NCBI GenBank assembly: GCA_035084275.1
Contig: CM068761.1
Span: 8,618,001-8,682,000 of the forward strand
Length of the DNA: 64,000 bases
Direction of reading: 5' to 3'
Source of the DNA: Hydrolagus colliei
Taxonomy: Eukaryota
In this document: positions 2,985 to 43,334 of the stretch, piece after piece
Position numbering within the stretch: position 1 is the first letter of the stretch
How the letters are laid out: every line of letters starts with the position of its first letter
Program-made: the position numbers and the translations under genes
Notes under the pieces: model-generated
The model's database searches: none
Seen by the model: the letters and a program-made list of their open reading frames with translations, nothing else
Told to the model about the DNA's origin: nothing

Positions 2985-3085
2985 TAAGAAAACTTGCGCA
3001 ATGTTTCGCCCTTCCTGGAATTGAGTCCAATTCTCTCGCTTTTAAGGCATGTGCTCTATCCACTGAGCTACTGGACTCCTCAGTT
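2985..3085 (-). mobile_element. tRNA-derived SINE head fragment
   Basis: Reverse complement reads GTAGCTCAGTGGATAGAGCACATGCCTTAAAAGCGAG...TCAATTCCAGG, with A- and B-box-like motifs. Same family as copies at 3.3, 8.1, 12.8, 31.6, 33.9, 38.8 and 62.0 kb. Confidence 0.7.
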
Positions 3086-3329
3086 GAAGGGTCCTCAGGC
3101 ATCCATCAGTATATTTATTATAATGATGATAATAGGAGGCGGCACCAATCCATGCAGATAGATGGGTAATCTGTAATAAACCAGATATTAGAATACAAAA
3201 TACATAGTAAATGTAGCAGAACATGTGTGGCTTTAATATGTGCTGACAACATAAGCAATAAGGAACTAGGGAAGATGAGGAAACAGATCGATCTGGAAAT
3301 GGAATGTGGAACACATGTAGCAGTATAAA

Positions 3330-8419: not shown

Positions 8420-8642
8420 AATCCGGGCAGTAAATTGATTCAAATTTGCAAGATGCTACATCTGCTTTTCAGAACAAGGATTCCTATTGGACGATGGGAG
8501 CCGGAGGACAATTTTCATAAATTGTGAATTCAACGGGACTTGCATCACCTGGTGGTTCTTAAGGAGAAGTTTACAATCGAACAGTAAAGTGTCTTTTGTC
8601 TGTGAATCACTAATTTCTCTGATGTTCATCAAACTGTTCACC
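8420..8642 (+). promoter_or_regulatory. Ig light-chain V promoter (unit D)
   Basis: Octamer variant ATTTGCAA (8444), reverse CCAAT box ATTGG (8486) and E-box CACCTG (8546). The block is conserved before all three V genes and in unit E. Confidence 0.65.
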
Positions 8643-9173
8643 ATGGGCGATTGGCTTCGAGTTCTTGCCGCTTTGCTCCTATGTCTGCATGGTAAGCGCT
8701 GCGGAATCCGCACTGATCTCAGTTACCTTACTTTGTACAGTTAGTTCTACAGTGTGACCTATCTACAGTGTGACGTATCTACACTGTGACTTATCTGTGA
8801 CTTGTTATTTCTCCAGGAACAACCGCAGCTGTTACCCTGACTCAGCCACCGTCCATCTCAACCTCCCCGGGAAACAGCGTCAAGATCACCTGTACCATGT
8901 CCGGAGGCAGCATCGGCAGCTACTACACGAGCTGGTACCAGCAGAAGCCTGGCAGCGCCCCTGTGTTTGTTTGGTATCAGTATGGGAGTAGCTCCGCCAA
9001 AGGTCAACGGATTCCTGATCGATTCACTGGTTCTGTGGACACATCGAGCAGCGCCATGCATTTAACCATCAGCGGTGTGCAGCCGGAGGATGCTGCCGAT
9101 TAGTACTGTGGTGTCGTATATAGCAGCAGCTCTCCCTTCACCTTTGGTAAAGGGACCAAGCTGAGTTTGAAAA
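8643..9173 (+). pseudogene. IGLV: Germline-joined Ig lambda-type leader-VJ, in-frame TAG, no C exon (unit D)
   Basis: Leader exon 8643-8691 ([17 protein letters not shown]), GT..AG intron, VJ exon 8817-9173 ([58 protein letters not shown]), donor GTAAGT at 9174. TAG at 9101-9103 replaces the Tyr of YYC. Confidence 0.95.
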
Positions 9174-11145
9174 GTAAGTGATCTTGTTTCGACTTTCGAT
9201 GATTATTGTGATCACGTCAGGAGGACGTCCAAATATAATTGTATGTTTGGCTGTATTCGATATTGTTTCACAGGTTTTCTGTGATAGTCGCATCTGGTGT
9301 CCTAATGATAAACATTTTATGTGGAAATCGGAAATGTAAAAGAATCAAACAAGAACAACAAGAACAACACATTACATTTATAGAGCGCCTTTCACGTCGG
9401 GAGTAGGTCCCAAGGCGCTGCACAGGAGGTGTGTGACCCGATCTAAGAGGGGAGTGTTTGGGAACGGGTGGAACACGAAGGGGAGGTCGAAAAATTCGGG
9501 GTGGAACAAAAGGCACGGTCGAAGAGGAAAGTCTTCAAAACGGCCTTGTAGGAGGAAAGAAAAGAAACGAGAAGGTGGGATTGAGGTATGGCATTCCATT
9601 GGGTGGGAGCGGAGAAACTGAAGGCCCGGCTTCCGATGGTGGGGCGGTTCGGGCGGGGGGCTGATTTTAACTGAAATTCTGTGAAGAATTTGGACGGATA
9701 TTACAGCCAACTAACAATGGTAAAAAGGTGGAGGAAGGAATGACATTAGCGAAGAAGAGATAATCGTGGTGATATTTATAGTTAACAGTCTGAAGGACTG
9801 ACGATTCATTGTAGCACCGCTTAGAGATCGTGGTAAAGAATGTGCTACACCAGGGAAATGTGTTCACACTTTACACCTGAGATTGAAGTTAAATATCATT
9901 GTGCCAGATTATTTAACTTCTATGTTTACTTGTTAACCTCTTTCCCCAGTTTGTCAGCACGAAGTGATGTTTAAAAGCATCTCCATCATAAGGAGATCAA
10001 CAGCATCTTTCCATCTGGTGACTGTCGCTCGGGTCTAATGTACCGATTGGTGAGCGGTTCAATCTCAGAGGGAACCGGATACCCTGAAAGTAGTGTTCGT
10101 CCGTGACTAACTGATCATTTTGAAAATTTAAACTTCTTTGAGACTCAGTAACATTATGTGTAACTGATATATGGGTGATGGAGAATAACTGTAGCGGAGT
10201 TTGTTCTCAGCATCATCACGCATTCAAATCTAATCAATTAGTTTTAGAATAATTCAAATGTTATAATCTTCTTCGTGTTATTGCCATAACATGGTAAATT
10301 GTCTTCGCATTTGAACATTTTTCTATTCCAGAGTTCTATTCGGATTTCTTCAAATATTTTATATTCTCCCCATTACCCCCATTAAAATACATTTCTATTT
10401 TACCATTTATTGAACGCATTTATCTTCAGGTTTCTAATTTTACAAACGTACTATTTTCTCCCAATTTCGTGGTTGATGTCGCTAAGGGCAGCACCATTGG
10501 AGATACTCAATAATATCATGGTTTTCACCACAAGTTGCTGCAGTTGGTCAGACGGGAATCATCGCTCATTAAAGACAGAGGCTGAGTGCCGGCTCAATCT
10601 TGTCAAAATACATTTTCTTCCTTGAAAATGAACTTTATTATTTCCCTCAGGCATCATATTAAAGGGATTCCGATTTGCGTATTGTGTATTGTGATTTGCG
10701 TATTGTTTATTGTGATTTGTGTATTTTGCGCTGGTATTTATGAATTAAAATCAACAAATACGGTGCCAAATAATTTTTTGTGAAATCGGAAGCCTCTCTC
10801 TGTAATCAATCAAAGATTGGATTCTGATTGTGCTCTTGAATTGTTTTTCAGTGCAGAGTTTTTGGTCAAAAGGAAAACGTTTATTTTCTTCCTATTTTCA
10901 GGTTCTTACTCTTTAGACAAACTCTTTCGAATTAATAATGATGTTTCACTGCGCTTTTACTCAGCCGCTCCCGCCACATATTCCTTGTGACGCGACATTT
11001 AGTGTCGTGTTTTATTTCTTATGATTGTATTTACTAATTATTTGAATTGAGGAAAATTTGAGCATGTGCCCACCACTGCAAAAAAACCCTATAATAAATT
11101 GGTCATTTCAACCCACGACAGTTTGTGAGACACTGATGTGCGCAA
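9174..11145 (+). other. J-C intron remnant of unit D, truncated before the C exon
   Basis: Colinear with the introns of units A (59143-61224) and C (35957-38030) until about 11145, where it joins upstream-type sequence. Confidence 0.85.
9345..9665 (-). mobile_element. L2 3' end inserted in the unit D intron
   Basis: Reverse-oriented tail (AACAAG)n...ATAGAGCGCCTTTCACGTCGGGAG. Absent from the introns of A and C. Confidence 0.8.
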
Positions 11146-13355
11146 TAGGGATTTGCAGAGGAGTGTTGGGTCAAAAGTATTATCTATCTGTTCATTTAAT
11201 TTATCAGTCAATGTATTATGGAAGTATTGAGTTTTAAAATGAATGCAGCGCTGGGTTTTCCACGCATGTGCAAGTTATTTGACTTTGACTTGTCCTAAAC
11301 GTGCATGGGATCAGCTCATGGACAGAATTGAATACACGTGAGTGGGCACTCTGGGGGAAATCTTCACTTGAGGACTGTTCTTCTTTTAGCGGTTTGTGTA
11401 ACATAACTCTATTCTTACACTAGCCGTTCCAATCTATATCACAATTTAGATGTCAGAGACATCTCCAGAAGATGGGACTTGTGTGTTCTTTTTTCATAAG
11501 AAGGAAAAGTAGTTTCACAGCTGTTAATATTTTATCAGAAAAAGCAGCCGCTGTAATTCACTGTGGCACTGATCTAGCTGTGATTCATACAGGGGCGACT
11601 TTCCGACTGTTTTAAAGGGAATGTAACCGAAAACATGTGTGGACAACCTGTGTGCGGATTTTCTTTCGTATTTTGTTTTGAACTGCTGTCATAACAATAA
11701 ATGTGTAAATATATATATTCAAAAATATTAAACCTTCTTTTGCAGCGCCTTAGGACGTCCTCGCGACGTGAAAGACGCTTTATAAGTTTAAATTGTTATT
11801 GTTGTTTTTTCCTACCACGACTGTCTCCAGGAACATTACTTCGATCGAATAAGAAATAACTAGCATGAAGTCAAAGCAAACCCAAATATGTCTATCTGTG
11901 TGTGTGAGGGATGGGTAACAGCAAATGACAATCGCTCTTATAAATATCAGATGTAATAACATGAAGTAACCATCTTGTATTTGTGCCAGGTTGAATGTTA
12001 ATTTCCCTGGGACTGGAATGGAATCCTGAGGCTCCACAGTCTCCCACTCTCTCCATATCCCTCACACCCTTACCTTATTGTGGAAAGTATTAGCTCCAGG
12101 TGGGCTACAGTCAAGGCATGGCCACGGGATTTGCCATTGGTGGCGTTGCGGTGGCGATGCCTTGACTGTAGAGGCCAAACACTGAAGGTGATTGATAACC
12201 CACTGTCTGTTGCTGTTCCCCAGGCTGACTGATGAAGAGAGAGGTCGCTGTATTTATTATTTATAATTTTGACTGCAAGAAATGTTCGTTTATCATCGGG
12301 GAATGTGAATCGCGCTATTATTCTGCTGTTAAACATATCACATCTGCAGTGAGGCATGGTGCAGTAAAGGGAATACTAGCATGAGAGCTGGGCTGGTACC
12401 TGGCGCAAGGTGATTTGGAGAATTTATTTCAGAAATCGAGAAACCGTATAAACAATTTGATTAACACTGTCACCGGCTGTAAAATGTGACTTGCACAGCA
12501 GGGTCTGTATCAGTTCAGGTGTGGCTTGTCAGTGTGTAAACTGTAACTGAATGAAAAGATGAAACTTTCCCAACTACAAATTATCTTTAATCGCGACAGG
12601 CTTCACCAGCGTATGATCCTCTTTGAACCTGGGCAAGCGAATCTTGCAGGATTCACACTCTGCAAAACCGTAAACTATATGAATATTTACAAGGATAAGA
12701 CTTGTCCAATATACGGTAAATAATTTAAGATTGTGCAATTTAAACAAAGTACTCCTTTTTATACTGCAAATGAAAACTAACATCATCTTCTGATATACTT
12801 TACCTCAGTGTTTAGAGCTCCAAGCGGGAAACATGGATTCGATTCCAGGCAGGGTGAAACTTTGGGCAAGTTTCCTTACTCCACACGCCTGATAATAATC
12901 GCGATTTTTTTTTGTGATTTCACTTCACAGCTGTTTGCTGGACACTGCTTTGCGCAATTGGCTGCAGCGATTTGTCCACAGATATACAGTCAATTAACTT
13001 TACATTATATACCGTGAAGCGCTGTGAGACGCCGAGAACACGTGAAAAACGCCATATCAAATGGATTATTATTATTATTATTATTTATTATCATTATTTA
13101 ATCAAACTCTCTAGGGTGAAACATTATGCAGTATTATCATGAAATACCTGTTGAAATCCGGGCGATAAATTCATTCAAATCTGCATGATGTTCCATCTGC
13201 TGTTCAGAACAAGGATTCCTATTGGACGATGGGAGCCGGAGGACAATTTGCCTAATTTACGAATTCAACTGCACTTGCATCACCTGATGGTTCTTAAGGA
13301 GAAGTTTACAATCGAGAAGTAAAGTGTCTTTTGTCTGTGAATCACTAATTTCTCT
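11146..13355 (+). pseudogene. Unit E: orphan upstream and promoter region, inverted sister of unit C
   Basis: Matches the reverse complement of 38560-43365 minus the transposon, including C-specific segments at 11147-11190 and 12030-12200. It ends at ...CACTAATTTCTCT, 22 nt before the position of the ATG in unit D. Confidence 0.88.
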
Positions 13356-15764
13356 CAAGGCCGTACGCAGGGGGGGGGTGCGACGGGTGCGTACGCACCC
13401 CCCCAAATTATAAAAGGTCCACATTTTCCGGGGTAGAGAATTGCATTTTTTTATCAAATTTAAATACCAAGTAAATTTATTGAACATTTGAGTAACAATC
13501 AGTTCTTCAAAACTATATATAAATTATAAACTCACATCTTTGAATGATTTAGTATTAATATAAAATTATCGAGTCGCACACCAGAATCGGCGTCTACCCC
13601 AAAACATACCGCGTCAATAGACCAGTCCATGACGCGGCGAGTCTGTGACTCGTGATTGGATAAACATAGGCGCCAAGACTCAAATCCTCGTTTGGAAATC
13701 ATCCTGTAAACAGCCACAAAGGGACAGCACCAATGCTGGAGTTAAAATCATCTTTTCATCTGATCACCGTAAGTAAAAATGACTCAAGTTTTGAGAGGTG
13801 TGACTGTAATGCTAGCAAACAATGACAACATATTTACAAGCTTCTGAGAAATTAAAGCTTTTGAGAACCCAACAAAAAAGTTATATGCTGGACGGGAATG
13901 CCTATCTTTAAAAAAAATACTCATGGACATAGACCTAGGCTTTAGCGCCTATTCTACGTGGTGTGTCAATCGGAAATCATCCCGTATACAGTCACTACAT
14001 AAAAAGGTAGCACCACTTTGTGGAAGCTGAAATCGTATTTTAATCTGATAATGTTAGCAATTGATAATAGTGCCTTAGTACATTGTCGAGACAGCTCAGA
14101 GCGCTTCACAGAACGTACTGTAAAGTGGCCAGTTTTTGCCCAGGATTGTCCCACAAACACCGATGGAGTGAGTCACCGATTTTATTTGGGGGCGTTTGTT
14201 GGCCAGGACAACAGGAGGGAGACTTCCCTCCGCTTTTCGAGTAGTGTCAGAGGATCTTTTCACATCCATCTAAACAGACGGATCAGACCTCGGTTCAGCA
14301 TCTCAACCAAAAGAACAGAGCCTCTAACAATGGGACACCCCCACACACAGCACCACATTGAAGTGTCAGCTTCCTCTGTGTGATACCGAGTGCCGACGTG
14401 GGGTTTGAACCCATAACTTTCTGACTCAGAGGCCAGAGTGCTACTCACTGTGCCAGGCGACTCGCCAGGTGATGCTGCTGTCTTCTATCACCTGTGGGAA
14501 ACTTTCTTTCCCTCCTACTCAGTGCCTCTGAATCTGAAGACATTCCCAAGGTCGAGGTTGCATATCTGACTGATTGACAACTGAGATTTATTTTCAGGGT
14601 TTGTGGGCAGTGTCACGTAATTGGCTATAACTTAAAGGATTGTTAACCTGCACCTGTTAGAGTTGAGGTCCCCAGAACTGCTGCCTCACACCAGCGGGAT
14701 ATAAAGGACAGGTGCAGTCGAGTCTGCAAAGCAACAGCTCTTCCTACACAAATCTCTTCAACGTGACTCCTCTGAAAGTCACTCTTTCTCTCTTTGAATA
14801 ATAATATAATCCGTGCATTTCATGTAGCGAGGTAGGTTAGGGCCGGTCTACCTCGTGTTCTGTGACCGTGCAATGGTTCCCATAGGATAGTAGGACTATG
14901 GACAGTTTCCTCCCGGCTTCTCCAGCTATGTCCGCTAAACCTAAGACGCCTCTGCGGTAATGTCTGTGATACCAGTGTGGTGGTGTACCATATAGCTCAC
15001 TATTTGTCAGATGCTGTCGCCAGTAAACATTCAGGGCGTCTCTTAGAAGCCTGGTGTATACCTCACGAGTCACCTAATCTCCTGGGTTTGCCTAAGTTTC
15101 CAGCATTCTGCTCCATATAGGAGCGACTTTCAGCCCTCGCGTTAATGCACATTCATTATAATATGGAAATCGATATTGGTAGAGCGGTTGACGTATTCGC
15201 TTCAAAGCGACCGAGGCATCTCGAATACGGAACGCTATTAAATAATTAATTTCCCCTCCCTTATTTTTTCAAGTATTTTTTCGTCAGATCAGTATTGCTT
15301 GATGGGTCACTTCCTTTAATTTTGATTCTAAATAAATAAAAACTAACTACACTATTGCTCACAGTTCAACGATATTTTCAGGATAATGCTGATAACAGGC
15401 TTGTAACACGTGTGAATTAACTGTTTTACATTGATTTTCAGTTTCTGTATATTTTCTTGTCTTTTATAAAATTTGCTTTGCTGGAATTTCTGAGCACATC
15501 ATTCATACTTTACTCTTACATTATTTTTCATTACAGTCCGAAAGAAATTTAGTCTTAGGATAACAATGCAGAACAACTTATTAATTACCGTCAATCTGTA
15601 GTTTATGATCATTTTCTCTATACGCCTACATTTATCAAGCATTCGTCATTGTACTGTGTTAATTGGATTGTAATTTACTTTATCGTTCGCATTCCTTACA
15701 TCATCGAGTCAACAATCGTGTTTGCTTTTATCGGCGAACACATTCGAACTTCCCAATTAGACAC
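13356..15764 (+). mobile_element. Non-autonomous TIR DNA transposon, copy 1, right end truncated
   Basis: Starts CAAGGCCGTACGCAGG and is colinear with the complete copy at 39820-42460, but lacks the last 230 bp or so. Confidence 0.92.
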
Positions 15765-15765
15765 T

Positions 15766-18401
15766 CAGGGCCGTACGCAGGATTTTTTTTGGGGGGGTGC
15801 GAATTGCTAGTGATGGGACCAACAATGGCCGGGGGCTTGGGGGCTGCCCCTGAAGCCCCCTCGAGGTTCCGACGTTTTACACAGTTTGAGGTCTTATTTA
15901 ATCGATTCAGAAGATCTAATATGAACGGTATTTATGCCCTTGGTGTTTAAGAGCATCATTATTTATTCAGTGTTTTTATTTTCCTGGGTAGTCCGTGTCT
16001 AATTGGGAAGTTCGATTGTGTTCGCCGATAAAAGCAAACACGATTGTTGACTCGATGATGTAAGGAATGCGAACGATAAAGTAAATTACAATCCAATTAA
16101 CACAGTACAATGACGAATGCTTGATAAATGTAGGCGTATAGAGAAAATGATCATAAACTACAGATTGACGGTAATTAATAAGTTGTTCTGCATTGTTATC
16201 CTAAGACTAAATTTCTTTCGGACTGTAATGAAAAATAATGTAAGAGTAAAGTATGAATGATGTGCTCAGAAATTCCAGCAAAGCAAATTTTATAAAAGAC
16301 AAGAAAATATACAGAAACTGAATATCAGTGTAAAACAGTTAATTCACACGTTTTACAAGCCTGTTATCAGCATTATCCTGAAAATATCGTTGAACTGTGA
16401 GCAATAGTGTAGTTAGTTTTTATTTATTTAGAATCAAAATTAAAGGAAGTGACCCATCAAGCAATACTGATCTGACGAAAAAATACTTGAAAAAATAAGG
16501 GAGGGGAAATTAATTATTTAATAGCGTTCCGTATTCGAGATGCCTCGGTCGCTTTGAAGCGAATACGTCAACCGCTCTACCAATATCGATTTCCATATTA
16601 TAATGAATGTGCATTAACGCGAGGGCTGAAAGTCGCTCCTATATGGAGCAGAATGCTGGAAACTTAGGCAAACCCAGGAGATTAGGTGACTCGTGAGGTA
16701 TACACCAGGCTTCTAAGAGACGCCCTGAATGTTTACTGGCGACAGCATCTGACAAATAGTGAGCTATATGGTACACCACCACACTGGTATCACAGACATT
16801 ACCGCAGAGGCGTCTTAGGTTTAGCGGACATAGCTGGAGAAGCCGGGAGGAAACTGTCCATAGTCCTACTATCCTATGGGAACCATTGCACGGTCACAGA
16901 ACACGAGGTAGACCGACCCTAACCTACCTCGCTACATGAAATGCACGGATTATATTATTATTCAAAGAGAGAAAGAGTGACTTTCAGAGGAGTCACGTTG
17001 AAGAGATTTGTGTAGGAAGAGCTGTTGCTTTGCAGACTCGACTGCACCTGTCCTTTATATCCCGCTGGTGTGAGGCAGCAGTTCTGGGGACCTCAACTCT
17101 AACAGGTGCAGGTTAACAATCCTTTAAGTTATAGCCAATTACGTGACACTGCCCACAAACCCTGAAAATAAATCTCAGTTGTCAATCAGTCAGATATGCA
17201 ACCTCGACCTTGGGAATGTCTTCAGATTCAGAGGCACTGAGTAGGAGGGAAAGAAAGTTTCCCACAGGTGATAGAAGACAGCAGCATCACCTGGCGAGTC
17301 GCCTGGCACAGTGAATAGCACTCTGGCCTCTGAGTCAGAAAGTTATGGGTTCAAACCCCACGTCGGCACTCGGTATCACACAGAGGAAGCTGACACTTCA
17401 ATGTGGTGCTGTGTGTGGGGGTGTCCCATTGTTAGAGGCTCTGTTCTTTTGGTTGAGATGCTGAACCGAGGTCTGATCCGTCTGTTTAGATGGATGTGAA
17501 AAGATCCTCTGACACTACTCGAAAAGCGGAGGGAAGTCTCCCTCCTGTTGTCCTGGCCAACAAACGCCCCCAAATAAAATCGGTGACTCACTCCATCGGT
17601 GTTTGTGGGACAATCCTGGGCAAAAACTGGCCACTTTACAGTACGTTCTGTGAAGCGCTCTGAGCTGTCTCGACAATGTACTAAGGCACTATTATCAATT
17701 GCTAACATTATCAGATTAAAATACGATTTCAGCTTCCACAAAGTGGTGCTACCTTTTTATGTAGTGACTGTATACGGGATGATTTCCGATTGACACACCG
17801 TGTAGAATAGGCGCTAAAGCCTAGGTCTATGTCCATGAGTATTTTTTTTAAAGATAGGCATTCCCGTCCAGCATATAACTTTTTTGTTGGGTTCTCAAAA
17901 GCTTTAATTTCTCAGAAGCTTGTAAATATGTTGTCATTGTTTGCTAGCATTACAGTCACACCTCTCAAAACTTGAGTCATTTTTACTTACGGTGATCAGA
18001 TGAAAAGATGATTTTAACTCCAGCATTGGTGCTGTCCCTTTGTGGCTGTTTACGGGATGATTTCCAAACGAGGATTTGAGTCTTGGCGCCTATGTTTATC
18101 CAATCACGAGTCACAGACTCGCCGCGTCATGGACTGGTCTATTGACGCGGTATGTTTTGGGGTAGACGCCGATTCTGGTGTGCGACTCGATAATTTTATA
18201 TTAATACTAAATCATTCAAAGATGTGAGTTTATAATTTATATATAGTTTTGAAGAACTGATTGTTACTCAAATGTTCAATAAATTTACTTGGTATTTAAA
18301 TTTGATAAAAAAATGCAATTCTCTACCCCGGAAAATGTGGACCTTTTATAATTTGGGGGGGTGCGTACGCACCCGTCGCACCCCCCCTGCGTACGGCCTT
18401 G
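15766..18401 (-). mobile_element. Non-autonomous TIR DNA transposon, copy 2 (inverted, complete)
   Basis: CAGGGCCGTACGCAGG ... CCTGCGTACGGCCTTG, 2636 bp. Confidence 0.93.
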
Positions 18402-18625
18402 ATCCCAAAGACACGAAAGTGCTATATCAATTGCAAGGACTATGTTATTATTGCTATTATTATTGTTATTATTCTACATATTTTTTAAATCATAAGAACA
18501 TAAGAAGTAGGAGCAGTAGTAGGCCATTCGGCCCTTCGAGCCTGCCCTGCCATTCAATCATGGCTGATATTCCATTCTAACTCTTAACTTCTAATCATGA
18601 TATTAAGGGGATTCGCCAGTACAGT
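18402..18625. repeat. 224-bp spacer of the tandem array, containing a CR1-type 3' end fragment (repeated at 21262-21485)
   Basis: Contains CATAAGAACATAAGAAGTAGGAGCAG...GGCCATTCGGCCCTTCGAGCC, a reverse CR1-like tail. The two spacer copies look identical by eye. Confidence 0.8.
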
Positions 18626-21261
18626 CAGGGCCGTACGCAGGATTTTTTTTGGGGGGGTGCGAATTGCTAGTGATGGGACCAACAATGGCCGGGGGCTTGG
18701 GGGCTGCCCCTGAAGCCCCCTCGAGGTTCCGACGTTTTACACAGTTTGAGGTCTTATTTAATCGATTCAGAAGATCTAATATGAACGGTATTTATGCCCT
18801 TGGTGTTTAAGAGCATCATTATTTATTCAGTGTTTTTATTTTCCTCGGTAGTCCGTGTCTAATTGGGAAGTTCGATTGTGTTCGCCGATAAAAGCAAACA
18901 CGATTGTTGACTCGATGATGTAAGGAATGCGAACGATAAAGTAAATTACAATCCAATTAACACAGTACAATGACGAATGCTTGATAAATGTAGGCGTATA
19001 GAGAAAATGATCATAAACTACAGATTGACGGTAATTAATAAGTTGTTCTGCATTGTTATCCTAAGACTAAATTTCTTTCGGACTGTAATGAAAAATAATG
19101 TAAGAGTAAAGTATGAATGATGTGCTCAGAAATTCCAGCAAAGCAAATTTTATAAAAGACAAGAAAATATACAGAAACTGAAAATCAGTGTAAAACAGTT
19201 AATTCACACGTTTTACAAGCCTGTTATCAGCATTATCCTGAAAATATCGTTGAACTGTGAGCAATAGTGTAGTTAGTTTTTATTTATTTAGAATCAAAAT
19301 TAAAGGAAGTGACCCATCAAGCAATACTGATCTGACGAAAAAATACTTGAAAAAATAAGGGAGGGGAAATTAATTATTTAATAGCGTTCCGTATTCGAGA
19401 TGCCTCGGTCGCTTTGAAGCGAATACGTCAACCGCTCTACCAATATCGATTTCCATATTATAATGAATGTGCATTAACGCGAGGGCTGAAAGTCGCTCCT
19501 ATATGGAGCAGAATGCTGGAAACTTAGGCAAACCCAGGAGATTAGGTGACTCGTGAGGTATACACCAGGCTTCTAAGAGACGCCCTGAATGTTTACTGGC
19601 GACAGCATCTGACAAATAGTGAGCTATATGGTACACCACCACACTGGTATCACAGACATTACCGCAGAGGCGTCTTAGGTTTAGCGGACATAGCTGGAGA
19701 AGCCGGGAGGAAACTGTCCATAGTCCTACTATCCTATGGGAACCATTGCACGGTCACAGAACACGAGGTAGACCGACCCTAACCTACCTCGCTACATGAA
19801 ATGCACGGATTATATTATTATTCAAAGAGAGAAAGAGTGACTTTCAGAGGAGTCACGTTGAAGAGATTTGTGTAGGAAGAGCTGTTGCTTTGCAGACTCG
19901 ACTGCACCTGTCCTTTATATCCCGCTGGTGTGAGGCAGCAGTTCTGGGGACCTCAACTCTAACAGGTGCAGGTTAACAATCCTTTAAGTTATAGCCAATT
20001 ACGTGACACTGCCCACAAACCCTGAAAATAAATCTCAGTTGTCAATCAGTCAGATATGCAACCTCGACCTTGGGAATGTCTTCAGATTCAGAGGCACTGA
20101 GTAGGAGGGAAAGAAAGTTTCCCACAGGTGATAGAAGACAGCAGCATCACCTGGCGAGTCGCCTGGCACAGTGAATAACACTCTGGCCTCTGAGTCAGAA
20201 AGTTATGGGTTCAAACCCCACGTCGGCACTCGGTATCACACAGAGGAAGCTGACACTTCAATGTGGTGCTGTGTGTGGGGGTGTCCCATTGTTAGAGGCT
20301 CTGTTCTTTTGGTTGAGATGCTGAACCGAGGTCTGATCCGTCTGTTTAGATGGATGTGAAAAGATCCTCTGACACTACTCGAAAAGCGGAGGGAAGTCTC
20401 CCTCCTGTTGTCCTGGCCAACAAACGCCCCCAAATAAAATCGGTGACTCACTCCATCGGTGTTTGTGGGACAATCCTGGGCAAAAACTGGCCACTTTACA
20501 GTACGTTCTGTGAAGCGCTCTGAGCTGTCTCGACAATGTACTAAGGCACTATTATCAATTGCTAACATTATCAGATTAAAATACGATTTCAGCTTCCACA
20601 AAGTGGTGCTACCTTTTTATGTAGTGACTGTATACGGGATGATTTCCGATTGACACACCATGTAGAATAGGCGCTAAAGCCTAGGTCTATGTCCATGAGT
20701 ATTTTTTTTAAAGATAGGCATTCCCGTCCAGCATATAACTTTTTTGTTGGGTTCTCAAAAGCTTTAATTTCTCAGAAGCTTGTAAATATGTTGTCATTGT
20801 TTGCTAGCATTACAGTCACACCTCTCAAAACTTGAGTCATTTTTACTTACGGTGATCAGATGAAAAGATGATTTTAACTCCAGCATTGGTGCTGTCCCTT
20901 TGTGGCTGTTTACGGGATGATTTCCAAACGAGGATTTGAGTCTTGGCGCCTATGTTTATCCAATCACGAGTCACAGACTCGCCGCGTCATGGACTGGTCT
21001 ATTGACGCGGTATGTTTTGGGGTAGACGCCGATTCTGGTGTGCGACTCGATAATTTTATATTAATACTAAATCATTCAAAGATGTGAGTTTATAATTTAT
21101 ATATAGTTTTGAAGAACTGATTGTTACTCAAATGTTCAATAAATTTACTTGGTATTTAAATTTGATAAAAAAATGCAATTCTCTACCCCGGAAAATGTGG
21201 ACCTTTTATAATTTGGGGGGGTGCGTACGCACCCGTCGCACCCCCCCTGCGTACGGCCTTG
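18626..21261 (-). mobile_element. Non-autonomous TIR DNA transposon, copy 3
   Basis: Exact 2860-bp periodicity, shown by identical ORF-track entries at 16686, 19546 and 22406. Confidence 0.93.
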
Positions 21262-21485
21262 ATCCCAAAGACACGAAAGTGCTATATCAATTGCAAGGAC
21301 TATGTTATTATTGCTATTATTATTGTTATTATTCTACATATTTTTTAAATCATAAGAACATAAGAAGTAGGAGCAGTAGTAGGCCATTCGGCCCTTCGAG
21401 CCTGCCCTGCCATTCAATCATGGCTGATATTCCATTCTAACTCTTAACTTCTAATCATGATATTAAGGGGATTCGCCAGTACAGT

Positions 21486-24121
21486 CAGGGCCGTACGCAG
21501 GATTTTTTTTGGGGGGGTGCGAATTGCTAGTGATGGGACCAACAATGGCCGGGGGCTTGGGGGCTGCCCCTGAAGCCCCCTCGAGGTTCCGACGTTTTAC
21601 ACAGTTTGAGGTCTTATTTAATCGATTCAGAAGATCTAATATGAACGGTATTTATGCCCTTGGTGTTTAAGAGCATCATTATTTATTCAGTGTTTTTATT
21701 TTCCTCGGTAGTCCGTGTCTAATTGGGAAGTTCGATTGTGTTCGCCGATAAAAGCAAACACGATTGTTGACTCGATGATGTAAGGAATGCGAACGATAAA
21801 GTAAATTACAATCCAATTAACACAGTACAATGACGAATGCTTGATAAATGTAGGCGTATAGAGAAAATGATCATAAACTACAGATTGACGGTAATTAATA
21901 AGTTGTTCTGCATTGTTATCCTAAGACTAAATTTCTTTCGGACTGTAATGAAAAATAATGTAAGAGTAAAGTATGAATGATGTGCTCAGAAATTCCAGCA
22001 AAGCAAATTTTATAAAAGACAAGAAAATATACAGAAACTGAAAATCAGTGTAAAACAGTTAATTCACACGTTTTACAAGCCTGTTATCAGCATTATCCTG
22101 AAAATATCGTTGAACTGTGAGCAATAGTGTAGTTAGTTTTTATTTATTTAGAATCAAAATTAAAGGAAGTGACCCATCAAGCAATACTGATCTGACGAAA
22201 AAATACTTGAAAAAATAAGGGAGGGGAAATTAATTATTTAATAGCGTTCCGTATTCGAGATGCCTCGGTCGCTTTGAAGCGAATACGTCAACCGCTCTAC
22301 CAATATCGATTTCCATATTATAATGAATGTGCATTAACGCGAGGGCTGAAAGTCGCTCCTATATGGAGCAGAATGCTGGAAACTTAGGCAAACCCAGGAG
22401 ATTAGGTGACTCGTGAGGTATACACCAGGCTTCTAAGAGACGCCCTGAATGTTTACTGGCGACAGCATCTGACAAATAGTGAGCTATATGGTACACCACC
22501 ACACTGGTATCACAGACATTACCGCAGAGGCGTCTTAGGTTTAGCGGACATAGCTGGAGAAGCCGGGAGGAAACTGTCCATAGTCCTACTATCCTATGGG
22601 AACCATTGCACGGTCACAGAACACGAGGTAGACCGACCCTAACCTACCTCGCTACATGAAATGCACGGATTATATTATTATTCAAAGAGAGAAAGAGTGA
22701 CTTTCAGAGGAGTCACGTTGAAGAGATTTGTGTAGGAAGAGCTGTTGCTTTGCAGACTCGACTGCACCTGTCCTTTATATCCCGCTGGTGTGAGGCAGCA
22801 GTTCTGGGGACCTCAACTCTAACAGGTGCAGGTTAACAATCCTTTAAGTTATAGCCAATTACGTGACACTGCCCACAAACCCTGAAAATAAATCTCAGTT
22901 GTCAATCAGTCAGATATGCAACCTCGACCTTGGGAATGTCTTCAGATTCAGAGGCACTGAGTAGGAGGGAAAGAAAGTTTCCCACAGGTGATAGAAGACA
23001 GCAGCATCACCTGGCGAGTCGCCTGGCACAGTGAATAGCACTCTGGCCTCTGAGTCAGAAAGTTATGGGTTCAAACCCCACGTCGGCACTCGGTATCACA
23101 CAGAGGAAGCTGACACTTCAATGTGGTGCTGTGTGTGGGGGTGTCCCATTGTTAGAGGCTCTGTTCTTTTGGTTGAGATGCTGAACCGAGGTCTGATCCG
23201 TCTGTTTAGATGGATGTGAAAAGATCCTCTGACACTACTCGAAAAGCGGAGGGAAGTCTCCCTCCTGTTGTCCTGGCCAACAAACGCCCCCAAATAAAAT
23301 CGGTGACTCACTCCATCGGTGTTTGTGGGACAATCCTGGGCAAAAACTGGCCACTTTACAGTACGTTCTGTGAAGCGCTCTGAGCTGTCTCGACAATGTA
23401 CTAAGGCACTATTATCAATTGCTAACATTATCAGATTAAAATACGATTTCAGCTTCCACAAAGTGGTGCTACCTTTTTATGTAGTGACTGTATACGGGAT
23501 GATTTCCGATTGACACACCATGTAGAATAGGCGCTAAAGCCTAGGTCTATGTCCATGAGTATTTTTTTTAAAGATAGGCATTCCCGTCCAGCATATAACT
23601 TTTTTGTTGGGTTCTCAAAAGCTTTAATTTCTCAGAAGCTTGTAAATATGTTGTCATTGTTTGCTAGCATTACAGTCACACCTCTCAAAACTTGAGTCAT
23701 TTTTACTTACGGTGATCAGATGAAAAGATGATTTTAACTCCAGCATTGGTGCTGTCCCTTTGTGGCTGTTTACGGGATGATTTCCAAACGAGGATTTGAG
23801 TCTTGGCGCCTATGTTTATCCAATCACGAGTCACAGACTCGCCGCGTCATGGACTGGTCTATTGACGCGGTATGTTTTGGGGTAGACGCCGATTCTGGTG
23901 TGCGACTCGATAATTTTATATTAATACTAAATCATTCAAAGATGTGAGTTTATAATTTATATATAGTTTTGAAGAACTGATTGTTACTCAAATGTTCAAT
24001 AAATTTACTTGGTATTTAAATTTGATAAAAAAATGCAATTCTCTACCCCGGAAAATGTGGACCTTTTATAATTTGGGGGGGTGCGTACGCACCCGTCGCA
24101 CCCCCCCTGCGTACGGCCTTG
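21486..24121 (-). mobile_element. Non-autonomous TIR DNA transposon, copy 4
   Basis: Both TIRs are present. Last unit of the 2860-bp array. Confidence 0.93.
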
Positions 24122-24368
24122 GTACACATATAGAAAATTAATCTGTTACCAGATATTAGAATAAGGAACCCCAAATTGAATTTATATACAGTAGAATTAG
24201 TGTTGCTATACGTTGTGGTTACAACATAAGAAATATGGAACTCGTGAAGACAAAGAGACATATTGGTCTGCAAATGAAATCATAGAATCATAGAATCATA
24301 GAATTTTACGGCACAAAAGGAGGCCATTCGGCCCATCTAGTCTGTGCCGGCTCTTTGAAAAGAGCGAT

Positions 24369-27300: not shown

Positions 27301-27377
27301 AACTCGACAACCTCCCTGCAAGGAGATTGGTTCCAGCCCTGTTCAGGTGTAACCCATCCATTTTGTACAGGTTCCAC
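24369..27377 (-). pseudogene. CR1 ORF2 (AP endonuclease plus reverse transcriptase) with one in-frame stop
   Basis: Motifs YVNARSL, TETW, GDFNYP, SDH, DFQKAFD, GVPQGSVLGP and FADD. TAG at 27108-27110 corresponds to CAG in the paralog at about 54229. The frame continues open for more than 887 codons. Confidence 0.93.
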
Positions 27378-28180
27378 CTACCCCAGAATTGGTCCCAATG
27401 GTCTAGGAACCAGAAACCCTCCTTCCTACACCACTTCTCCAGCCATGCATTGATGTGCCTTATTCTAGCATTCTGGAACTGGCTTGCTCGAGGCACTGGA
27501 AGCAACCCAGAGATCACCACTCTCGAAGTTCCACTTTTTAGTTTACTCCCTAGTCTCTGGTACTCTCCCTGGAGCATCTCATGTCTTTTCCTCTCAACTT
27601 CATGGGTCCCAATATGGACCACCACAAGTGGATTTTCCCCTTCCCCTAGCAGAATTTCATGCACCCGCTCAGTCAAGTCTTCAACCCTGGCACCTGGTAG
27701 GCAACACACCTTCCGAGATTCGCGTTTCCGTTCACAAAAACGCCTATCTATACCACGGACAGTTGTATCTCCTTTTAAAATGGTCTTGATGGAGTTGGTT
27801 TGTCCAACCTTCTCACAGACCTCCTTATCCAAACAGGTTGAAAGTACTTCATACCTGTTGGAAATGGTTACAGTCTGGGGTTTCTCTGCACCAGTCTTGT
27901 GGTTCCGCACACCCGGTCGTCTGACTGTCACCCAGTCCTGACCGTGGCTGGCAACAGCGCACTCTTGTTCCCTAGGTCTTGGTGGAGTGTCAGGCTCTAG
28001 GATGAAACTATCTAAGAAGCTCTCCCCTTCCCTGATGCACCGCAATGTCTCCACCTGATACTCCAGCTCAGCTATTCTAAGCTGGAGCTTCCTCAGGTGC
28101 AGACATTTGCTGCAGATGAAGTCACCTTGGCTCAGGTTTCCCTCCATCAACTCCCACATCCCGCATTCCTCGCACATCAC
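27278..28180 (-). CDS. CR1 ORF1: zinc-finger/coiled-coil plus SGNH esterase-like domain
   Basis: CEECGMWE..CSKC, a leucine-zipper-like LQLRIAELEYQVETL, and SGNH blocks GDT / PGA / GTHE / DGLHLN. Overlaps ORF2 by 100 nt. Confidence 0.85.
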   Translation of the reverse strand: MMCEECGMWELMEGNLSQGDFICSKCLHLRKLQLRIAELEYQVETLRCIREGESFLDSFILEPDTPPRPREQECAVASHGQDWVTVRRPGVRNHKTGAEKPQTVTISNRYEVLSTCLDKEVCEKVGQTNSIKTILKGDTTVRGIDRRFCERKRESRKVCCLPGARVEDLTERVHEILLGEGENPLVVVHIGTHEVERKRHEMLQGEYQRLGSKLKSGTSRVVISGLLPVPRASQFQNARIRHINAWLEKWCRKEGFWFLDHWDQFWGRWNLYKMDGLHLNRAGTNLLAGRLSSFVGGALN

Positions 28181-39120: not shown

Positions 39121-40559
39121 AAAGTATATCAGAAAATCATGTTAGTTTTCATTTGTGGTATAAAAAAGAGTACCTTGTTTAAATTGCACAAACATAAATT
39201 ATTTACAGTATATTGGACAAGTCTTATCCTTATAAATATTCATATAGTTCACGGTTTTGCACAATGTGAATCCAGCAAGATTCGCTTGCCCAGGTTCAAA
39301 GAGGATCATACGCTGGTGAAGCTTGTTCCGATGAAAGATAATTTGTAGTTGGGAAACTTTCCTTTTTTCATTCAGTTACAGTTTACACACTGACAAGCCA
39401 CACCAGAACTGATACAGACCCTGCCGTGCAAGTCACATTTTACAGCCGGTGACAGGGTTCCTCAAATTATTTGTACGGTTTCTGGATTTCTGAAATAAAT
39501 TCTCCAATTCACCTTGCGGCAGGTACCAGCCCTGCCCTCACGCTAGGATTCCCTTTACTGCACCATGCCTCACTGCAGATGTGATATGTTTAACAGCAGA
39601 ATAATAGCGCGATTCACATTCCCCGATGATAAACGAACATATCTTTCAGGCAATGTTATAAATAATGAATAAGGTGACGTCTCTCTTGATCAGCCAGCCT
39701 GGGGAACAGCAACACTTTAGAGATAGGGGGTTATCACATACAGTGTTCGGCCTCTACAGTCAAGGCATCGCCACCGCAACCCCATGAATGGCATAACCCG
39801 TGGCCATGCCTTGACTGTACAAGGCCGTACGCAGGGGGGGTGCGACGGGTGCGTACGCACCCCCCCAAATTATAAAAGGTCCACATTTTCCGGGGTAGAG
39901 AATTGCATTTTTTTATCAAATTTAAATACCAAGTAAATTTATTGAACATTTGAGTAACAATCAGTTCTTCAAAACTATATATAAATTATAAACTCACATC
40001 TTTGAATGATTTAGTATTAATATAAAATTATCGAGTCGCACACCAGAATCGGCGTCTACCCCAAAACATACCGCGTCAATAGACCAGTCCATGACGCGGC
40101 GAGTCTGTGACTCGTGATTGGATAAACATAGGCGCCAAGACTCAAATCCTCGTTTGGAAATCATCCCGTAAACAGCCACAAAGGGACAGCACCAATGCTG
40201 GAGTTAAAATCATCTTTTCATCTGATCACCGTAAGTAAAAATGACTCAAGTTTTGAGAGGTGTGACTGTAACGCTAGCAAACAATGACAACATATTTACA
40301 AGCTTCTGAGAAATTAAAGCTTTTGAGAACCCAACAAAAAAGTTATATGCTGGACGGGAATGCCTATCTTTAAAAAAAATACTCATGGACATAGACCTAG
40401 GCTTTAGCGCCTATTCTACGTGGTGTGTCAATCGGAAATCATCCCGTATACAGTCACTACATAAAAAGGTAGCACCACTTTGTGGAAGCTGAAATCGTAT
40501 TTTAATCTGATAATGTTAGCAATTGATAATAGTGCCTTAGTACATTGTCAGACAGCTCA

Positions 40560-40935
40560 GAGCGCTTCACAGAACGTACTGTAAAGTGGCCAGTTTTTGC
40601 CCAGGATTGTCCCACAAACACCGATGGAGTGAGTCACCGATTTTATTTGGGGGCGTTTGTTGGCCAGGACAACAGGAGAGAGACTTCCCTCCGCTTTTCG
40701 AGTAGTGTCAGAGGATCTTTTCACATCCATCTAAACAGACGGATCAGACCTCGGTTCAGCATCTCAACCAAAAGAACAGCCTCTAACAATGGGACACCCC
40801 CCCCCCCCCCCCCACAGCACCACATTGAAGTGTCAGCTTCCTCTGTGTGATACCGAGTGCCGACGTGGGGTTTGAACCCATAACTTTCTGACTCAGAGGC
40901 CAGAGTGCTATTCACTGTGGCAGGCGACTCGCCAG
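40560..40935 (-). mobile_element. Old Deu-domain SINE (SacSINE1-like) carried inside the transposon
   Basis: Head AATAGCACTCTGGCCTCTGAGTCAGAAAGTTATGGGTTCAAACCC, then GCTGACACTTCA...AACCGAGGTC...AAAGATCCT...GTCCTGGCCAA. Present in all five element copies. Family name is from recall. Confidence 0.7.
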
Positions 40936-41299
40936 GTGATGCTGCTGTCTTCTATCACCTGTGGGAAACTTTCTTTCCCTCCTACTCAGTGCCTCTGAAT
41001 CTGAAGACATTCCCAAGGTCGAGGTTGCATATCTGACTGATTGACAACTGAGATTTATTTTCAGGGTTTGTGGGCAGTGTCACGTAATTGGCTATAACTT
41101 AAAGGATTGTTAACCTGCACCTGTTAGAGTTGAGGTCCCCAGAACTGCTGCCTCACACCAGCGGGATATAAAGGACAGGTGCAGTCGAGTCTGCAAAGCC
41201 ACAGCTCTTCCTACACAAATCTCTTCAACGTGACTCCTCTGAAAGTCACTCTTTCTCTCTTTGAATAATAATATAATCCGTGCATTTCATGTAGCGAGG

Positions 41300-41620
41300 T
41301 AGGTTAGGGTCGGTCTACCTCGTGTTCTGTGACCGTGCAATGGTTCCCATAGGATAGTAGGACTATGGACAGTTTCCTCCCGGCTTCTCCAGCTATGTCC
41401 GCTAAACCTAAGACGCCTCTGCGGTAATGTCTGTGATACCAGTGTGGTGGTGTACCATATAGCTCACTATTTGTCAGATGCTGTCGCCAGTAAACATTCA
41501 GGGCGTCTCTTAGAAGCCTGGTATATACCTCACGAGTCACCTAATCTCCTGGGTTTGCCTAAGTTTCCAGCATTCTGCTCCATATAGGAGCGACGTTCAG
41601 CTCTCGCGTTAATGCACATT
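41300..41620 (-). mobile_element. RTE-clade LINE 3' coding fragment carried inside the transposon
   Basis: LLYGAECW..YTRLLRDALNVYWRQHLTNSELYG..LWEPLHG..RGRPTLTY with frameshifts, typical of RTE ORF C-termini. Confidence 0.75.
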
Positions 41621-43334
41621 CATTATAATATGGAAATCGATATTGGTAGAGCGGTTGACGTATTCGCTTCAAAGCGACCGAGGCGTCTCGAATACGGAAC
41701 GCTATTAAATAATTAATTTCCCCTCCCTTATTTTTTCAAGTATTTTTTCGTCAGATCAGTATTGCTTGATGGGTCACTTCCTTTAATTTTGATTCTAAAT
41801 AAATAAAAACTAACTACACTATTGCTCACAGTTCAACGATATTTTCAGGATAATGCTGATAACAGGCTTGTAACACGTGTGAATTAACTGTTTTACACTG
41901 ATTTTCAGTTTCTGTATATTTTCTTGTCTTTTATAAAATTTGCTTTGCTGGAATTTCTGAGCACATCATTCATACTTTACTCTTACATTATTGTTCATTA
42001 CAGTCCGAAAGAAATTTAGTCTTAGGATAACAATGCAGAACAACTTATTAATTACCGTCAATCTGTAGTTTATGATCATTTTCTCTATACGCCTACATTT
42101 ATCAAGCATTCGTCATTGTACTGTGTTAATTGGATTGTAATTTACTTTATCGTTCGCATTCCTTACATCATCGAGTCAACAATCGTGTTTGCTTTTATCG
42201 GCGAACACATTCGAACTTCCCAATTAGACACGGACTACCGAGGAAAATAAAAACACTGAATAAATAATGATGCTCTTAAACACCAAGGGCATAAATACCG
42301 TTCATATTAGATCTTCTGAATCGATTAAATAAGACCTCAAACTGTGTAAAACGTCGGAACCTCGAGGGGGCTTCAGGGGCAGCCCCCAAGCCCCCGGCCA
42401 TTGTTGGTCCCATCACTAGCAATTCGCACCCCCCCAAAAAAAATCCTGCGTACGGCCCTGCTGTAGCCCACCTGAAGCTAATACTTCCCACAATAAGGTA
42501 AGCGGTGTGAGGGAGATGGAGAGAGGGGGAGAGTGAGGAGCCTCAGGATTCCATTCCACTCCCAGGGAAATTACCAATCAACCTGGCACAAATACAAGAT
42601 GGTTACTTCATGTTATTACATCTGATGTTTTTAAGAGCGATCGTCATTTGCTGTTATCCATCCCTCACACACACAGATGGAAATATTTGGGTTTGTTTTG
42701 ACTTCATGCTAGTTATTTCTTATTCGATCGAAGGAATTTACCTGGAGACAGTCGTGGTAGGAAAAAAGATAGGTTTAATATTTTTGTATATATCTATTTA
42801 TACATATATTTGTTATGACACCAATTCAAAACAAAATACAAAAGAAAATCCACGCATAGGTTGTCCACACATTTTTTTCGGTTACGTTACCTTTAAAAAC
42901 ACTCGGCAGTCGCCCGTGTGTGAATCACAGCCAGATCAGTGCCACAGTGAATTACAGCGGCTGCTTTTTCTGATAAAACATTAACAGCTGTGAATCTACT
43001 TTTCCTTCCTTTGAAAAAAGAACACACAAGTCCCATCTTCTGGACATGTCTCTGACATCTAAATTGTGATATAGATTGGAACGGAGAGTGTAAGAACAGA
43101 TTTATGTTACACAACCCGCTAAAAGAAGAACAGTCCTCAAGTGAAGCTTTCCCCCAGAAATCCCACTCACGTGTATTCAATTCTGTCCATGCGTTGCTCC
43201 CATGCACGTTTAGGACAAGTAAAAGTCAAATAACTTGCACATGCGTGGAAAACCCAGCGCTGCGTTCATTTTCAATCTGAATACTTCCATAATACATTGT
43301 CTGTTAAACTAAATGAACAGATAGATAATACTTT

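What the first reader, a model, noticed from the sequence alone, without database searches (positions are those of the whole stretch)
13356..18401. Double-Ds-like structure: a transposon inserted in inverted orientation into its own sister
A forward copy is cut about 230 bp from its right end, exactly where the right TIR of an inverted complete copy begins. The result is a palindrome with arms of about 2.4 kb at roughly 99% identity and a spacer of about 230 bp. The left arm shares variants with the 39.8-kb copy (GTAACACG, ACATTCG, CTACGTGG) and not with its neighbour, so this is nesting rather than fold-back. It sits 22 nt upstream of the lost ATG of unit E, and no TSD partner is visible. This resembles the chromosome-breaking double/sesqui-Ds of maize, which causes adjacent deletions, and could explain the loss of E's coding region.
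Basis: partly seen in the sequence, partly recalled or inferred. Interest (0 to 1): 0.72.

Follow-up and report, generated by a model that had tools for sequence, protein, structure and literature searches.

The report
Transposon rearrangement scar beheading antibody gene
In a chimaera-type fish's antibody light-chain gene array, a small jumping gene has left a mirror-image pair plus a triple tandem of itself in place of one gene's coding part; this is a clear natural example of a known kind of transposon-made deletion, not a new system.

Summary
The palindrome is real. Copy A (13356-15764, forward) lacks its last ~230 nt. After one extra T it abuts the right terminus of a complete inverted copy B (15766-18401). 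The arms are 2409 nt at 99.5% identity, with a 230-nt centre.

B is the first of three inverted copies (B, C, D) at an exact 2860-nt period, each separated by an identical 224-nt spacer. B's other flank is that spacer, not the rest of A. So this is a one-and-a-half ("sesqui") structure, not a double-Ds nest.

The element is a 2641-nt non-coding TIR element. A 5-bp TSD is shown by an empty site in a paralogue. D sits at an original insertion site. C is best read as an unequal-crossover product of B and D. B has unrelated flanks, both joined exactly at its termini.

Best reading (0.7): one aberrant transposition deleted A's tail and the leader-VJ-C part of light-chain unit E. Whether B nested in A first cannot be decided.

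This is a new member of a known kind, of moderate interest. The scan has already noted this kind of element elsewhere in the same genome.

The parts
11145..13355 (+). Remnant of light-chain unit E: upstream and promoter region only, ending 22 nt before where the leader ATG should be. Its octamer is mutated (ATTTGCCT).
   Evidence: It is 91-93% identical to 43363-38563 of unit F. The alignment with three paralogues breaks exactly at 13355/13356.
13351..13355 (+). TCTCT, the presumed 5-bp target of copy A. No partner copy is present.
   Evidence: Flank table. No second TCTCT lies beside any terminus.
13356..15764 (+). Copy A: forward, with an intact left terminus, truncated after element position ~2409. 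It lacks the last ~230 nt and the right TIR.
15765..15765 (.). A single T at the A|B junction (J1). It is not in the element consensus, which has G here. C and D also have a T next to their right terminus.
15766..18401 (-). Copy B: complete and inverted. Its right-terminal 229 nt (15766-15994) form the centre of the palindrome. Its two flanks are unrelated (A interior and spacer start) and show no TSD.
18402..18625 (+). Spacer 1 (224 nt), holding the tail of a CR1/SINE-like repeat. It is joined exactly to B's left terminus (junction J2).
   Evidence: Identical to 21262-21485.
18626..21261 (-). Copy C: complete and inverted. Its right flank equals D's and its left flank equals B's. It is read as an unequal-crossover product of B and D.
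21262..21485 (+). Spacer 2, identical to spacer 1. Its last ~32 nt plus the flank beyond D align as one contiguous stretch to paralogue 3118-3299.
21486..24121 (-). Copy D: complete and inverted, at the original insertion site of the B/C/D lineage. GTACA lies on both sides, offset by 2 nt (GT) on the right-end side.
24122..24274 (+). Unique flank beyond D's left terminus. It was contiguous with the spacer end before the insertion.
   Evidence: The artificial join of spacer end and flank aligns to 3118-3299 at E = 1.5e-19.
39820..42460 (+). Solo complete copy in unit F (2641 nt). TIRs are CAAGGCCGTACGCAGG and CCTGCGTACGGCCCTG. It has a 5-bp TSD, CTGTA, at 39815-39819 and 42461-42465.
12106..12110 (+). 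Empty site of the solo copy, preserved in unit E (TACAG). It proves a 5-bp TSD and real transposition.
3118..3299 (+). Related stretch (67% identity) that reads straight through the site where D is inserted. It acts as an empty-site equivalent.

Best explanation
The 13.4-24.1 kb block is the scar of activity by a recently mobile, non-autonomous 2.64-kb TIR DNA transposon that makes 5-bp target duplications.

Shown by the sequence. Copy A was an ordinary insertion 22 nt upstream of the leader ATG of light-chain unit E. Copy D was an ordinary insertion some kilobases downstream, in inverted orientation. Copy B lies 224 nt from D and has flanks from two different places. Its right terminus is joined to position ~2409 inside A. 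Its left terminus is joined to the start of the 224-nt spacer. Both joints are exact at the terminus, and neither has a target duplication.

Inferred mechanism. One aberrant (alternative) transposition joined a cut terminus of B to a nearby site. Everything in between was discarded: A's last ~230 nt, E's leader-VJ-C, and intergenic DNA, probably about 8 kb in all. Two orders of events fit equally well.
(a) B first inserted normally into A, giving a double-Ds-like nest. Then the directly oriented pair, B's left end and A's right end, transposed aberrantly to the spacer start and deleted the interval.
(b) B first hopped 224 nt from D. Then its right end struck A's interior in a reversed-ends type deletion.

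Copy C then arose by unequal crossing-over between B and D. This explains three elements with only two spacers, and why C carries D's right flank and B's left flank.

The structure has no evident present function. It is a pseudogenising rearrangement and a possibly unstable palindrome.
For: - The family is mobile. The solo copy has a clean 5-bp TSD, and its empty site survives in unit E. The copies differ by only 0.04-0.65%.
- The element is non-autonomous. It has no ORF over 121 aa and no transposase domain.
- A is an independent insertion. Its left terminus abuts E's promoter exactly where three paralogues continue to the ATG.
- D is an independent insertion. The spacer end and the flank beyond D align contiguously to 3118-3299 at E = 1.5e-19. 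GTACA lies on both sides, and a 5-mer match at offsets 0-2 has a chance of about 0.003.
- B has non-matching flanks, and both novel joints sit on a terminus to within 0-1 nt. For random breakpoints this has a chance of about 1e-3 per joint and about 1e-6 for both.
- The variant tree is (solo,(A,(B,C,D))), with C-D closest. This fits C being a late crossover product.
- E's coding half and A's right end are absent from the window.
- Published precedent exists. Ac/Ds alternative transposition makes terminus-precise deletions and element-initiated tandem duplications, in which the second element shares a TSD on one side only (PMC3744419).
Against: - The palindrome and the copy number of three rest on the assembly alone.
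- No transposase or autonomous partner was found in the window or in earlier notes, so the superfamily and its end requirements are unknown.
- The deleted DNA is gone, so no reciprocal TSD can be shown. The two event orders cannot be told apart.
- D's TSD is imperfect: 2 nt (GT) lie between GTACA and the right terminus.
- The T at J1 is unexplained. It may be one carried-over flank base or filler from end-joining repair.
- Order (b) needs two right ends, or a single end, to act together. Many transposases do not allow that.
Confidence: 0.7

Rival explanations
1. Assembly artefact. The palindrome, the three-fold tandem, or both were produced by mis-assembly of near-identical transposon copies or of two haplotypes.
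For: The copies are 99.5-99.96% identical and tandem, which is hard to assemble. Exact look-ups of junction-spanning ORFs in public collections found nothing.
Against: The arms differ at 9 sites plus an indel. B and C carry private variants, so the copies were resolved separately. The window has no N. Every novel joint falls on a transposon terminus to the base, which mis-joins would not do. The palindrome centre is asymmetric, unlike chimeric fold-back reads.
Confidence: 0.08
2. Fold-back or replication-based palindrome. A break at B's right terminus was repaired by fold-back priming or template switching, which copied B in reverse to make A.
For: The junction lies at a transposase cleavage site and carries a 1-nt filler-like T. 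The A-B divergence of 0.37% could have built up after such an event.
Against: A copy made from B would continue past B's left terminus into the reverse complement of the spacer. Instead A ends exactly at its own terminus against E's promoter, at a site that is uninterrupted in three paralogues. There is no microhomology at the base of the loop. A keeps three ancestral states that B, C and D have lost.
Confidence: 0.05
3. Transposase-independent rearrangement. Ordinary deletion, end-joining or non-allelic recombination in a repeat-rich Ig array removed E's coding part, and the breakpoints lie at element ends by coincidence. Alternatively, E was never complete.
For: The array is a patchwork with other truncated units that have no element terminus at the break: the D|E junction at 11145-11149 and the orphan C unit at 48.3-51.0 kb. 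E's octamer is already decayed.
Against: Two independent joints fall exactly on termini, with a chance of about 1e-6. E's homology stops exactly at A's terminus.
Confidence: 0.1
4. Functional hairpin locus. Read-through from E's orphan promoter across the 2.4-kb palindrome makes double-stranded RNA that silences the transposon family, in the way maize Mu killer silences MuDR.
For: The geometry alone: a promoter remnant ends at the start of a long inverted duplication of a partial element. The Mu killer comparison comes from my own knowledge, not from a tool result.
Against: E's octamer is mutated. An Ig light-chain promoter would act in B cells, not in the germ line. No expression data could be obtained. 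Nothing shows selection for the structure.
Confidence: 0.04

Closest known systems
Maize double-Ds and its one-and-a-half derivative 'sesqui-Ds' (Ac/Ds, hAT superfamily). The structures are recalled from my own knowledge. Double Ds is mentioned in PMC3260210.
   Same: Two near-identical copies of a non-autonomous TIR element lie in inverted orientation. One is complete and the other is cut. The joint lies exactly at the complete copy's terminus. This puts termini into the abnormal relative orientation that supports aberrant transposition and adjacent deletions.
   Different: Only one half of the host copy is present, so it is not a double Ds. The TSD is 5 bp, not 8 bp. The superfamily is unknown and no transposase was found. 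The host is a holocephalan fish. Chromosome breakage has not been observed. The complete copy is also part of a three-fold tandem array.
Alternative transposition of Ac/Ds (reversed-ends, sister-chromatid and single-chromatid transposition) and P-element hybrid element insertion (Zhang et al. 2013, PMC3744419).
   Same: Terminus-precise deletions and duplications occur next to elements. Tandem repeats are each initiated by an element, where the first has a full TSD and the next shares it on one side only. That is exactly the relation of D to C.
   Different: In maize the reciprocal products and shared TSDs were recovered. Here the reciprocal product is lost. The tandem here can also be explained by a local hop plus unequal crossing-over (three elements, two spacers), with no need for reversed-ends duplication.
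Maize Mu killer, an inverted duplication of a partial MuDR element (from my own knowledge).
   Same: A natural inverted duplication of a partial transposon lies beside a foreign promoter.
   Different: There is no evidence here for transcription, small RNAs or silencing. The promoter is an Ig promoter with a decayed octamer.

Membership tests
Double Ds-type nested pair | Both parts of the host copy flank the inverted insert | tested here: not met
   B's far flank is the 224-nt spacer shared with C, not A's last 230 nt. The window has only 4 right termini for 5 left termini.
Double Ds-type nested pair | Target-site duplication of host-element sequence on both sides of the insert | tested here: not met
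   On the element's own strand, B's flanks are GGGAT and AGTGT.
Double Ds-type nested pair | Two near-identical copies in inverted orientation, joined at a precise terminus | tested here: met
   99.54% identity over 2410 nt. The joint lies at 15764/15766 with one extra T.
Sesqui-Ds-type (one complete copy plus a partial inverted copy) | A complete element abutting a truncated inverted copy at the complete element's terminus | tested here: met
Sesqui-Ds-type (one complete copy plus a partial inverted copy) | Causes chromosome breakage or adjacent deletions when transposase is present | not testable with these tools
   This needs genetics or population data. Only the static loss of E's coding part is seen.
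hAT superfamily | 8-bp target-site duplication | tested here: not met
   The TSD is 5 bp, proven by the empty site at 12106-12110.
hAT superfamily | hAT transposase (BED and dimerisation domains) encoded by an autonomous member | tested here: inconclusive
   No transposase domain was found in the element or the window. None is recorded in earlier notes. The rest of the genome could not be searched.
Transib / RAG-like transposons (the classic 5-bp TSD group, PMC1131882) | 5-bp TSD | tested here: met
Transib / RAG-like transposons (the classic 5-bp TSD group, PMC1131882) | Termini with an RSS-like CAC heptamer (CACAATG or CACAGTG) and a nonamer at 12/23 spacing | tested here: not met
   The termini read CAAGGCC and CAGGGCC. 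No nonamer lies at 12 or 23 nt (read directly).
Transposon-initiated tandem direct duplication (Zhang et al. 2013) | Each repeat begins with an element. The first element has a full TSD. The next has the same flank on one side and a non-matching flank on the other. | tested here: met
   D has GTACA on both sides. C has D's right flank and a non-matching left flank, GGGAT.
Transposon-initiated tandem direct duplication (Zhang et al. 2013) | A reciprocal deletion product sharing the TSD | not testable with these tools
   The reciprocal chromatid is not recoverable from a single assembly.

The most novel reading that the evidence does not exclude
The A-B-C-D block is a still-active chromosome-breaking composite in a vertebrate. 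Its seven closely spaced termini, in abnormal orientations inside an antibody light-chain array, would keep generating terminus-precise deletions and duplications. The transposon family would then be a main driver of birth and death of Ig clusters in chimaeras. Earlier notes on this genome report another beheaded cluster beside a transposon copy about 69 kb beyond the window, a 4.5-kb fold-back of one transposon end, and 2.6-kb inverted transposon copies around an MHC-II beta exon. A bolder variant is that this 5-bp-TSD family represents an undescribed vertebrate superfamily.
Probability: 0.12. Interest if true: 0.7.

Novelty: new member of a known kind. Interest (0 to 1): 0.38.

Why it matters
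It gives base-level evidence that a recently mobile DNA transposon removed the coding part of a cartilaginous-fish antibody light-chain gene, where unequal recombination is the usual explanation. It did so through terminus-precise joints of the kind worked out experimentally for maize Ac/Ds and Drosophila P elements. Natural examples in vertebrates are few. If reads and other haplotypes confirm it, the locus would be a compact case study combining a palindrome, a tandem array and a deletion. It would also be a starting point for finding the autonomous element of an unclassified family with 5-bp TSDs. It reveals no new mechanism.

Tried and rejected
The assembly could not be verified.
- Exact look-up of eight junction-spanning ORFs in the public protein collection, as an indirect probe for independent assemblies: none was present.
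- Earlier-findings search by sequence with the spacer and the element start: blank. The operators had warned that a blank there means nothing.
- Search for a transposase. Pfam on all ORFs and stop-free pieces of the element, and on neighbouring ORFs, gave no transposase hit. It found only a CR1-like LINE (esterase ORF1 plus APE/RT ORF2) beside copy D.
- RAG/Transib reading of the 5-bp TSD: rejected, because the termini lack a CAC heptamer and a nonamer.
- One concerted aberrant insertion making both J1 and J2: rejected, because the 5-nt flanks differ (ACACT versus ATCCC).
- Composite transposition of A+B (13356-18401) or A..D as a unit: rejected, because the outer flanks TCTCT versus ATCCC or GTACA give no TSD.
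- The spacer as part of a longer element form: rejected, because the spacer start has no TIR-like sequence.
- Microhomology-mediated fold-back at the loop base: none found.
- Literature search for 'sesqui-Ds', and for this kind of element in chimaera Ig loci: nothing in the held library.
Full report
**1. Observation**

The repeat finder gives arms 13372-15764 and 15995-18387 with 230 nt between them. BLAST extends the arms to the element terminus: 13355/6-15764 versus 18402-15995, 2410 nt at 99.54% identity, with 9 mismatches and one gap. The window has no N.

The same arm also matches 18855-21262 and 21715-24121. In addition, 15761-21261 equals 18621-24121 at 99.89% identity. So the inverted partner is the first of three head-to-tail copies at an exact 2860-nt period. 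A fifth, solo copy lies at 39820-42460.

**2. The element**

The solo copy is 2641 nt long. Its TIRs are 16 nt: CAAGGCCGTACGCAGG and CCTGCGTACGGCCCTG. A shared subterminal motif, GGGGGGGTGCGA, lies inside both ends.

Unit E itself preserves the solo copy's empty site. The solo's two flanks overlap on 12106-12110 (TACAG). This proves real transposition with a 5-bp target duplication.

A pattern search finds nine termini in the window, five left and four right, where none is expected by chance.

The element has no ORF above 121 aa. Pfam gives no transposase hit on its ORFs or stop-free pieces. One minus-strand stretch looks, by eye, like a LINE ORF2 C-terminal fragment. The element is therefore non-autonomous with a mosaic interior.

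Its superfamily is unassigned:
- A 5-bp TSD argues against hAT, which makes 8 bp.
- Termini reading CAAGG and CAGGG, with no nonamer, argue against Transib/RAG-like ends.

**3. Context**

The window is an array of immunoglobulin light-chain clusters with germline-joined VJ. V-set and C1-set domains were confirmed. Earlier notes place the genome in a chimaera/ratfish.

Unit E (11145-13355) keeps only its upstream region, which is 91-93% identical to unit F. In units D, F and G the sequence ...AATTTCTCT continues for 22 nt to the leader ATG. In E it continues into copy A.

The leader motif occurs only three times in the window, so E's leader-VJ-C is absent. E's octamer is mutated, ATTTGCCT against ATTTGCAT in F and G.

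**4. Junctions**

- P_E|A: TTTCTCT|CAAGG. This is a normal-looking left junction.
- J1, A|B: A stops at ...TTAGACAC (15764). One T follows, then B's right terminus CAGGG (15766).
- J2, B|spacer and C|spacer: the left terminus ...CCTTG is joined directly to ATCCC..., the start of a 224-nt spacer. The two spacers, 18402-18625 and 21262-21485, are identical.
- Spacer|C and spacer|D: ...CCAGTACAGT|CAGGG.
- D|flank: ...CCTTG|GTACACATAT.

An artificial join of the spacer end to the flank beyond D aligns as one contiguous stretch to 3118-3299, at 67% identity and E = 1.5e-19. One search shows the alignment at base level. So spacer|D|flank is an original insertion site. GTACA lies on both sides, but it is separated from the right terminus by GT. 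A 5-mer match at offsets 0-2 has a chance of about 0.003.

B has flanks from two unrelated places and no TSD.

**5. Relationships of the copies**

- The solo copy is the outgroup, 0.53-0.65% from the others.
- B, C and D share three derived sites against solo plus A.
- Private substitutions: A has five plus a GG indel, B has three, C has one, D has none.
- Pairwise divergence: A-B 0.37%, B-C 0.15%, B-D 0.11%, C-D 0.04%.

These are ancestral states. They show that A separated before B, C and D separated from each other. They do not by themselves exclude an old fold-back.

Fold-back copying is instead excluded by A's left junction. A copy templated on B would run on into the reverse complement of the spacer. 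A does not. It stops at its own terminus against E's promoter, at a site that is intact in three paralogues.

**6. Interpretation**

The array holds three elements but only two spacers. C has D's right flank and B's left flank. The simplest reading is that B and D are the primary copies, and C is an unequal-crossover product of them.

D is an ordinary insertion. A is an ordinary insertion whose right part is gone. B marks a rearrangement. Both of its termini are joined, to the base, to non-matching DNA. For random breakpoints this would happen with a probability of about 1e-6. That points to transposase-made joints.

Two orders of events fit:
- (a) B inserted normally into A, giving a double-Ds-like nest. 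The directly oriented pair, B's left end and A's right end, then transposed aberrantly to the spacer start. This deleted A's tail, E's coding part and the intergenic DNA. It uses a canonical left-plus-right end pair.
- (b) B hopped 224 nt from D. Its right end, with A's right end or alone, then struck A's interior in a reversed-ends type deletion.

The deleted DNA carried the diagnostic TSD partners, so the sequence cannot decide between them.

By analogy with units F and D, the lost interval is about 5 kb of leader-VJ-C-3' region plus about 3 kb of intergenic DNA. This size is an inference.

**7. Comparison with known systems**

The A+B part has the one-and-a-half architecture of maize sesqui-Ds (from my own knowledge). 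It fails two defining features of a double Ds: both host halves present, and a TSD around the insert.

The D/C relation meets the published signature of transposon-initiated tandem duplications (PMC3744419, section 10). Here, however, a local hop plus unequal crossing-over explains it equally well.

Alternative transposition (reversed-ends, sister-chromatid, P-element hybrid element insertion) is the known class of mechanism. The present case is a new instance in a holocephalan Ig locus, with an unclassified 5-bp-TSD element.

**8. Limits**

- Exact look-ups of junction-spanning ORFs found nothing.
- An assembly artefact therefore cannot be formally excluded. It is unlikely, given the private variants in each copy, the asymmetric centre and the terminus-exact joints.
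- No autonomous partner was found.

Earlier notes on the same genome were not tested here. They mention:
- a recently active hAT-like transposon with 5-bp TSDs;
- a 4.5-kb fold-back of one transposon end;
- two inverted 2.6-kb transposon copies, plus 239 bp of neighbouring sequence, around an MHC-II beta exon;
- another light-chain cluster beheaded beside a transposon copy about 69 kb beyond this window.

So the scan has met this kind of element before on other DNA of this genome.

**9. Verdict**

The structure is a rearrangement scar of a known kind, with no evidence of present function. Interest is moderate.

Noticed in passing
window 24275-28200 (minus) and 53600-56911 (plus): Two copies of a CR1-like LINE, 98% identical. 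The first has an uninterrupted 887-aa ORF2 (APE endonuclease plus reverse transcriptase) and a 300-aa ORF1 with a GDSL-esterase domain. Its 3' tail carries 8-nt repeats (ATTCTATG). It may be a recently active LINE family.
   Followed up: partly
window 8643-11149, with a junction at 11145-11149: The plus-strand unit before E has a promoter, a leader and a V exon that ends at a stop (100 aa open), but no C exon. Its homology to the other units stops at 11149, where E's upstream region begins. This is a second truncated cluster, and no transposon terminus lies at its break.
   Followed up: partly
window 48297-51008: A partial light-chain unit with a C exon (49400-49699 family) and 3' region, but apparently no promoter, leader or VJ. 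No terminus of the 2.6-kb element lies nearby.
   Followed up: no
window 13246-13253, 8511-8518: The promoter octamer ATTTGCAT is intact in units F and G. It is mutated in E (ATTTGCCT) and in the unit at 8.6 kb (ATTTTCAT), in line with both being dead clusters.
   Followed up: partly
window 28958-30633 versus 31720-32528; blocks 1-30.6 kb versus 31.7-64 kb: Light-chain units are plus-oriented in the left part of the window and minus-oriented in the right part. The switch lies around 30.6-31.7 kb, inside an old diverged inverted repeat (68-77% identity) of a strongly G/C-skewed repeat. That repeat is also present at 6-1733, 46.4-47.4 kb and 51.6-53.4 kb.
   Followed up: no
window 3000-3090: A stretch that looks by eye like a tRNA-derived SINE head on the minus strand lies next to the empty-site-like paralogue. 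ARAGORN calls no tRNA gene anywhere in the window.
   Followed up: partly
window 13257-13487 (minus), 18272-18580, 23992-24141, 39734-39949 (minus): Every copy carries an ATG ORF that starts about 130 nt inside the left end and reads outward across the terminus into the flank (shared start MFNKFTWYLNLIKK...). It is probably fortuitous, but it gives a different tail at each insertion site.
   Followed up: partly
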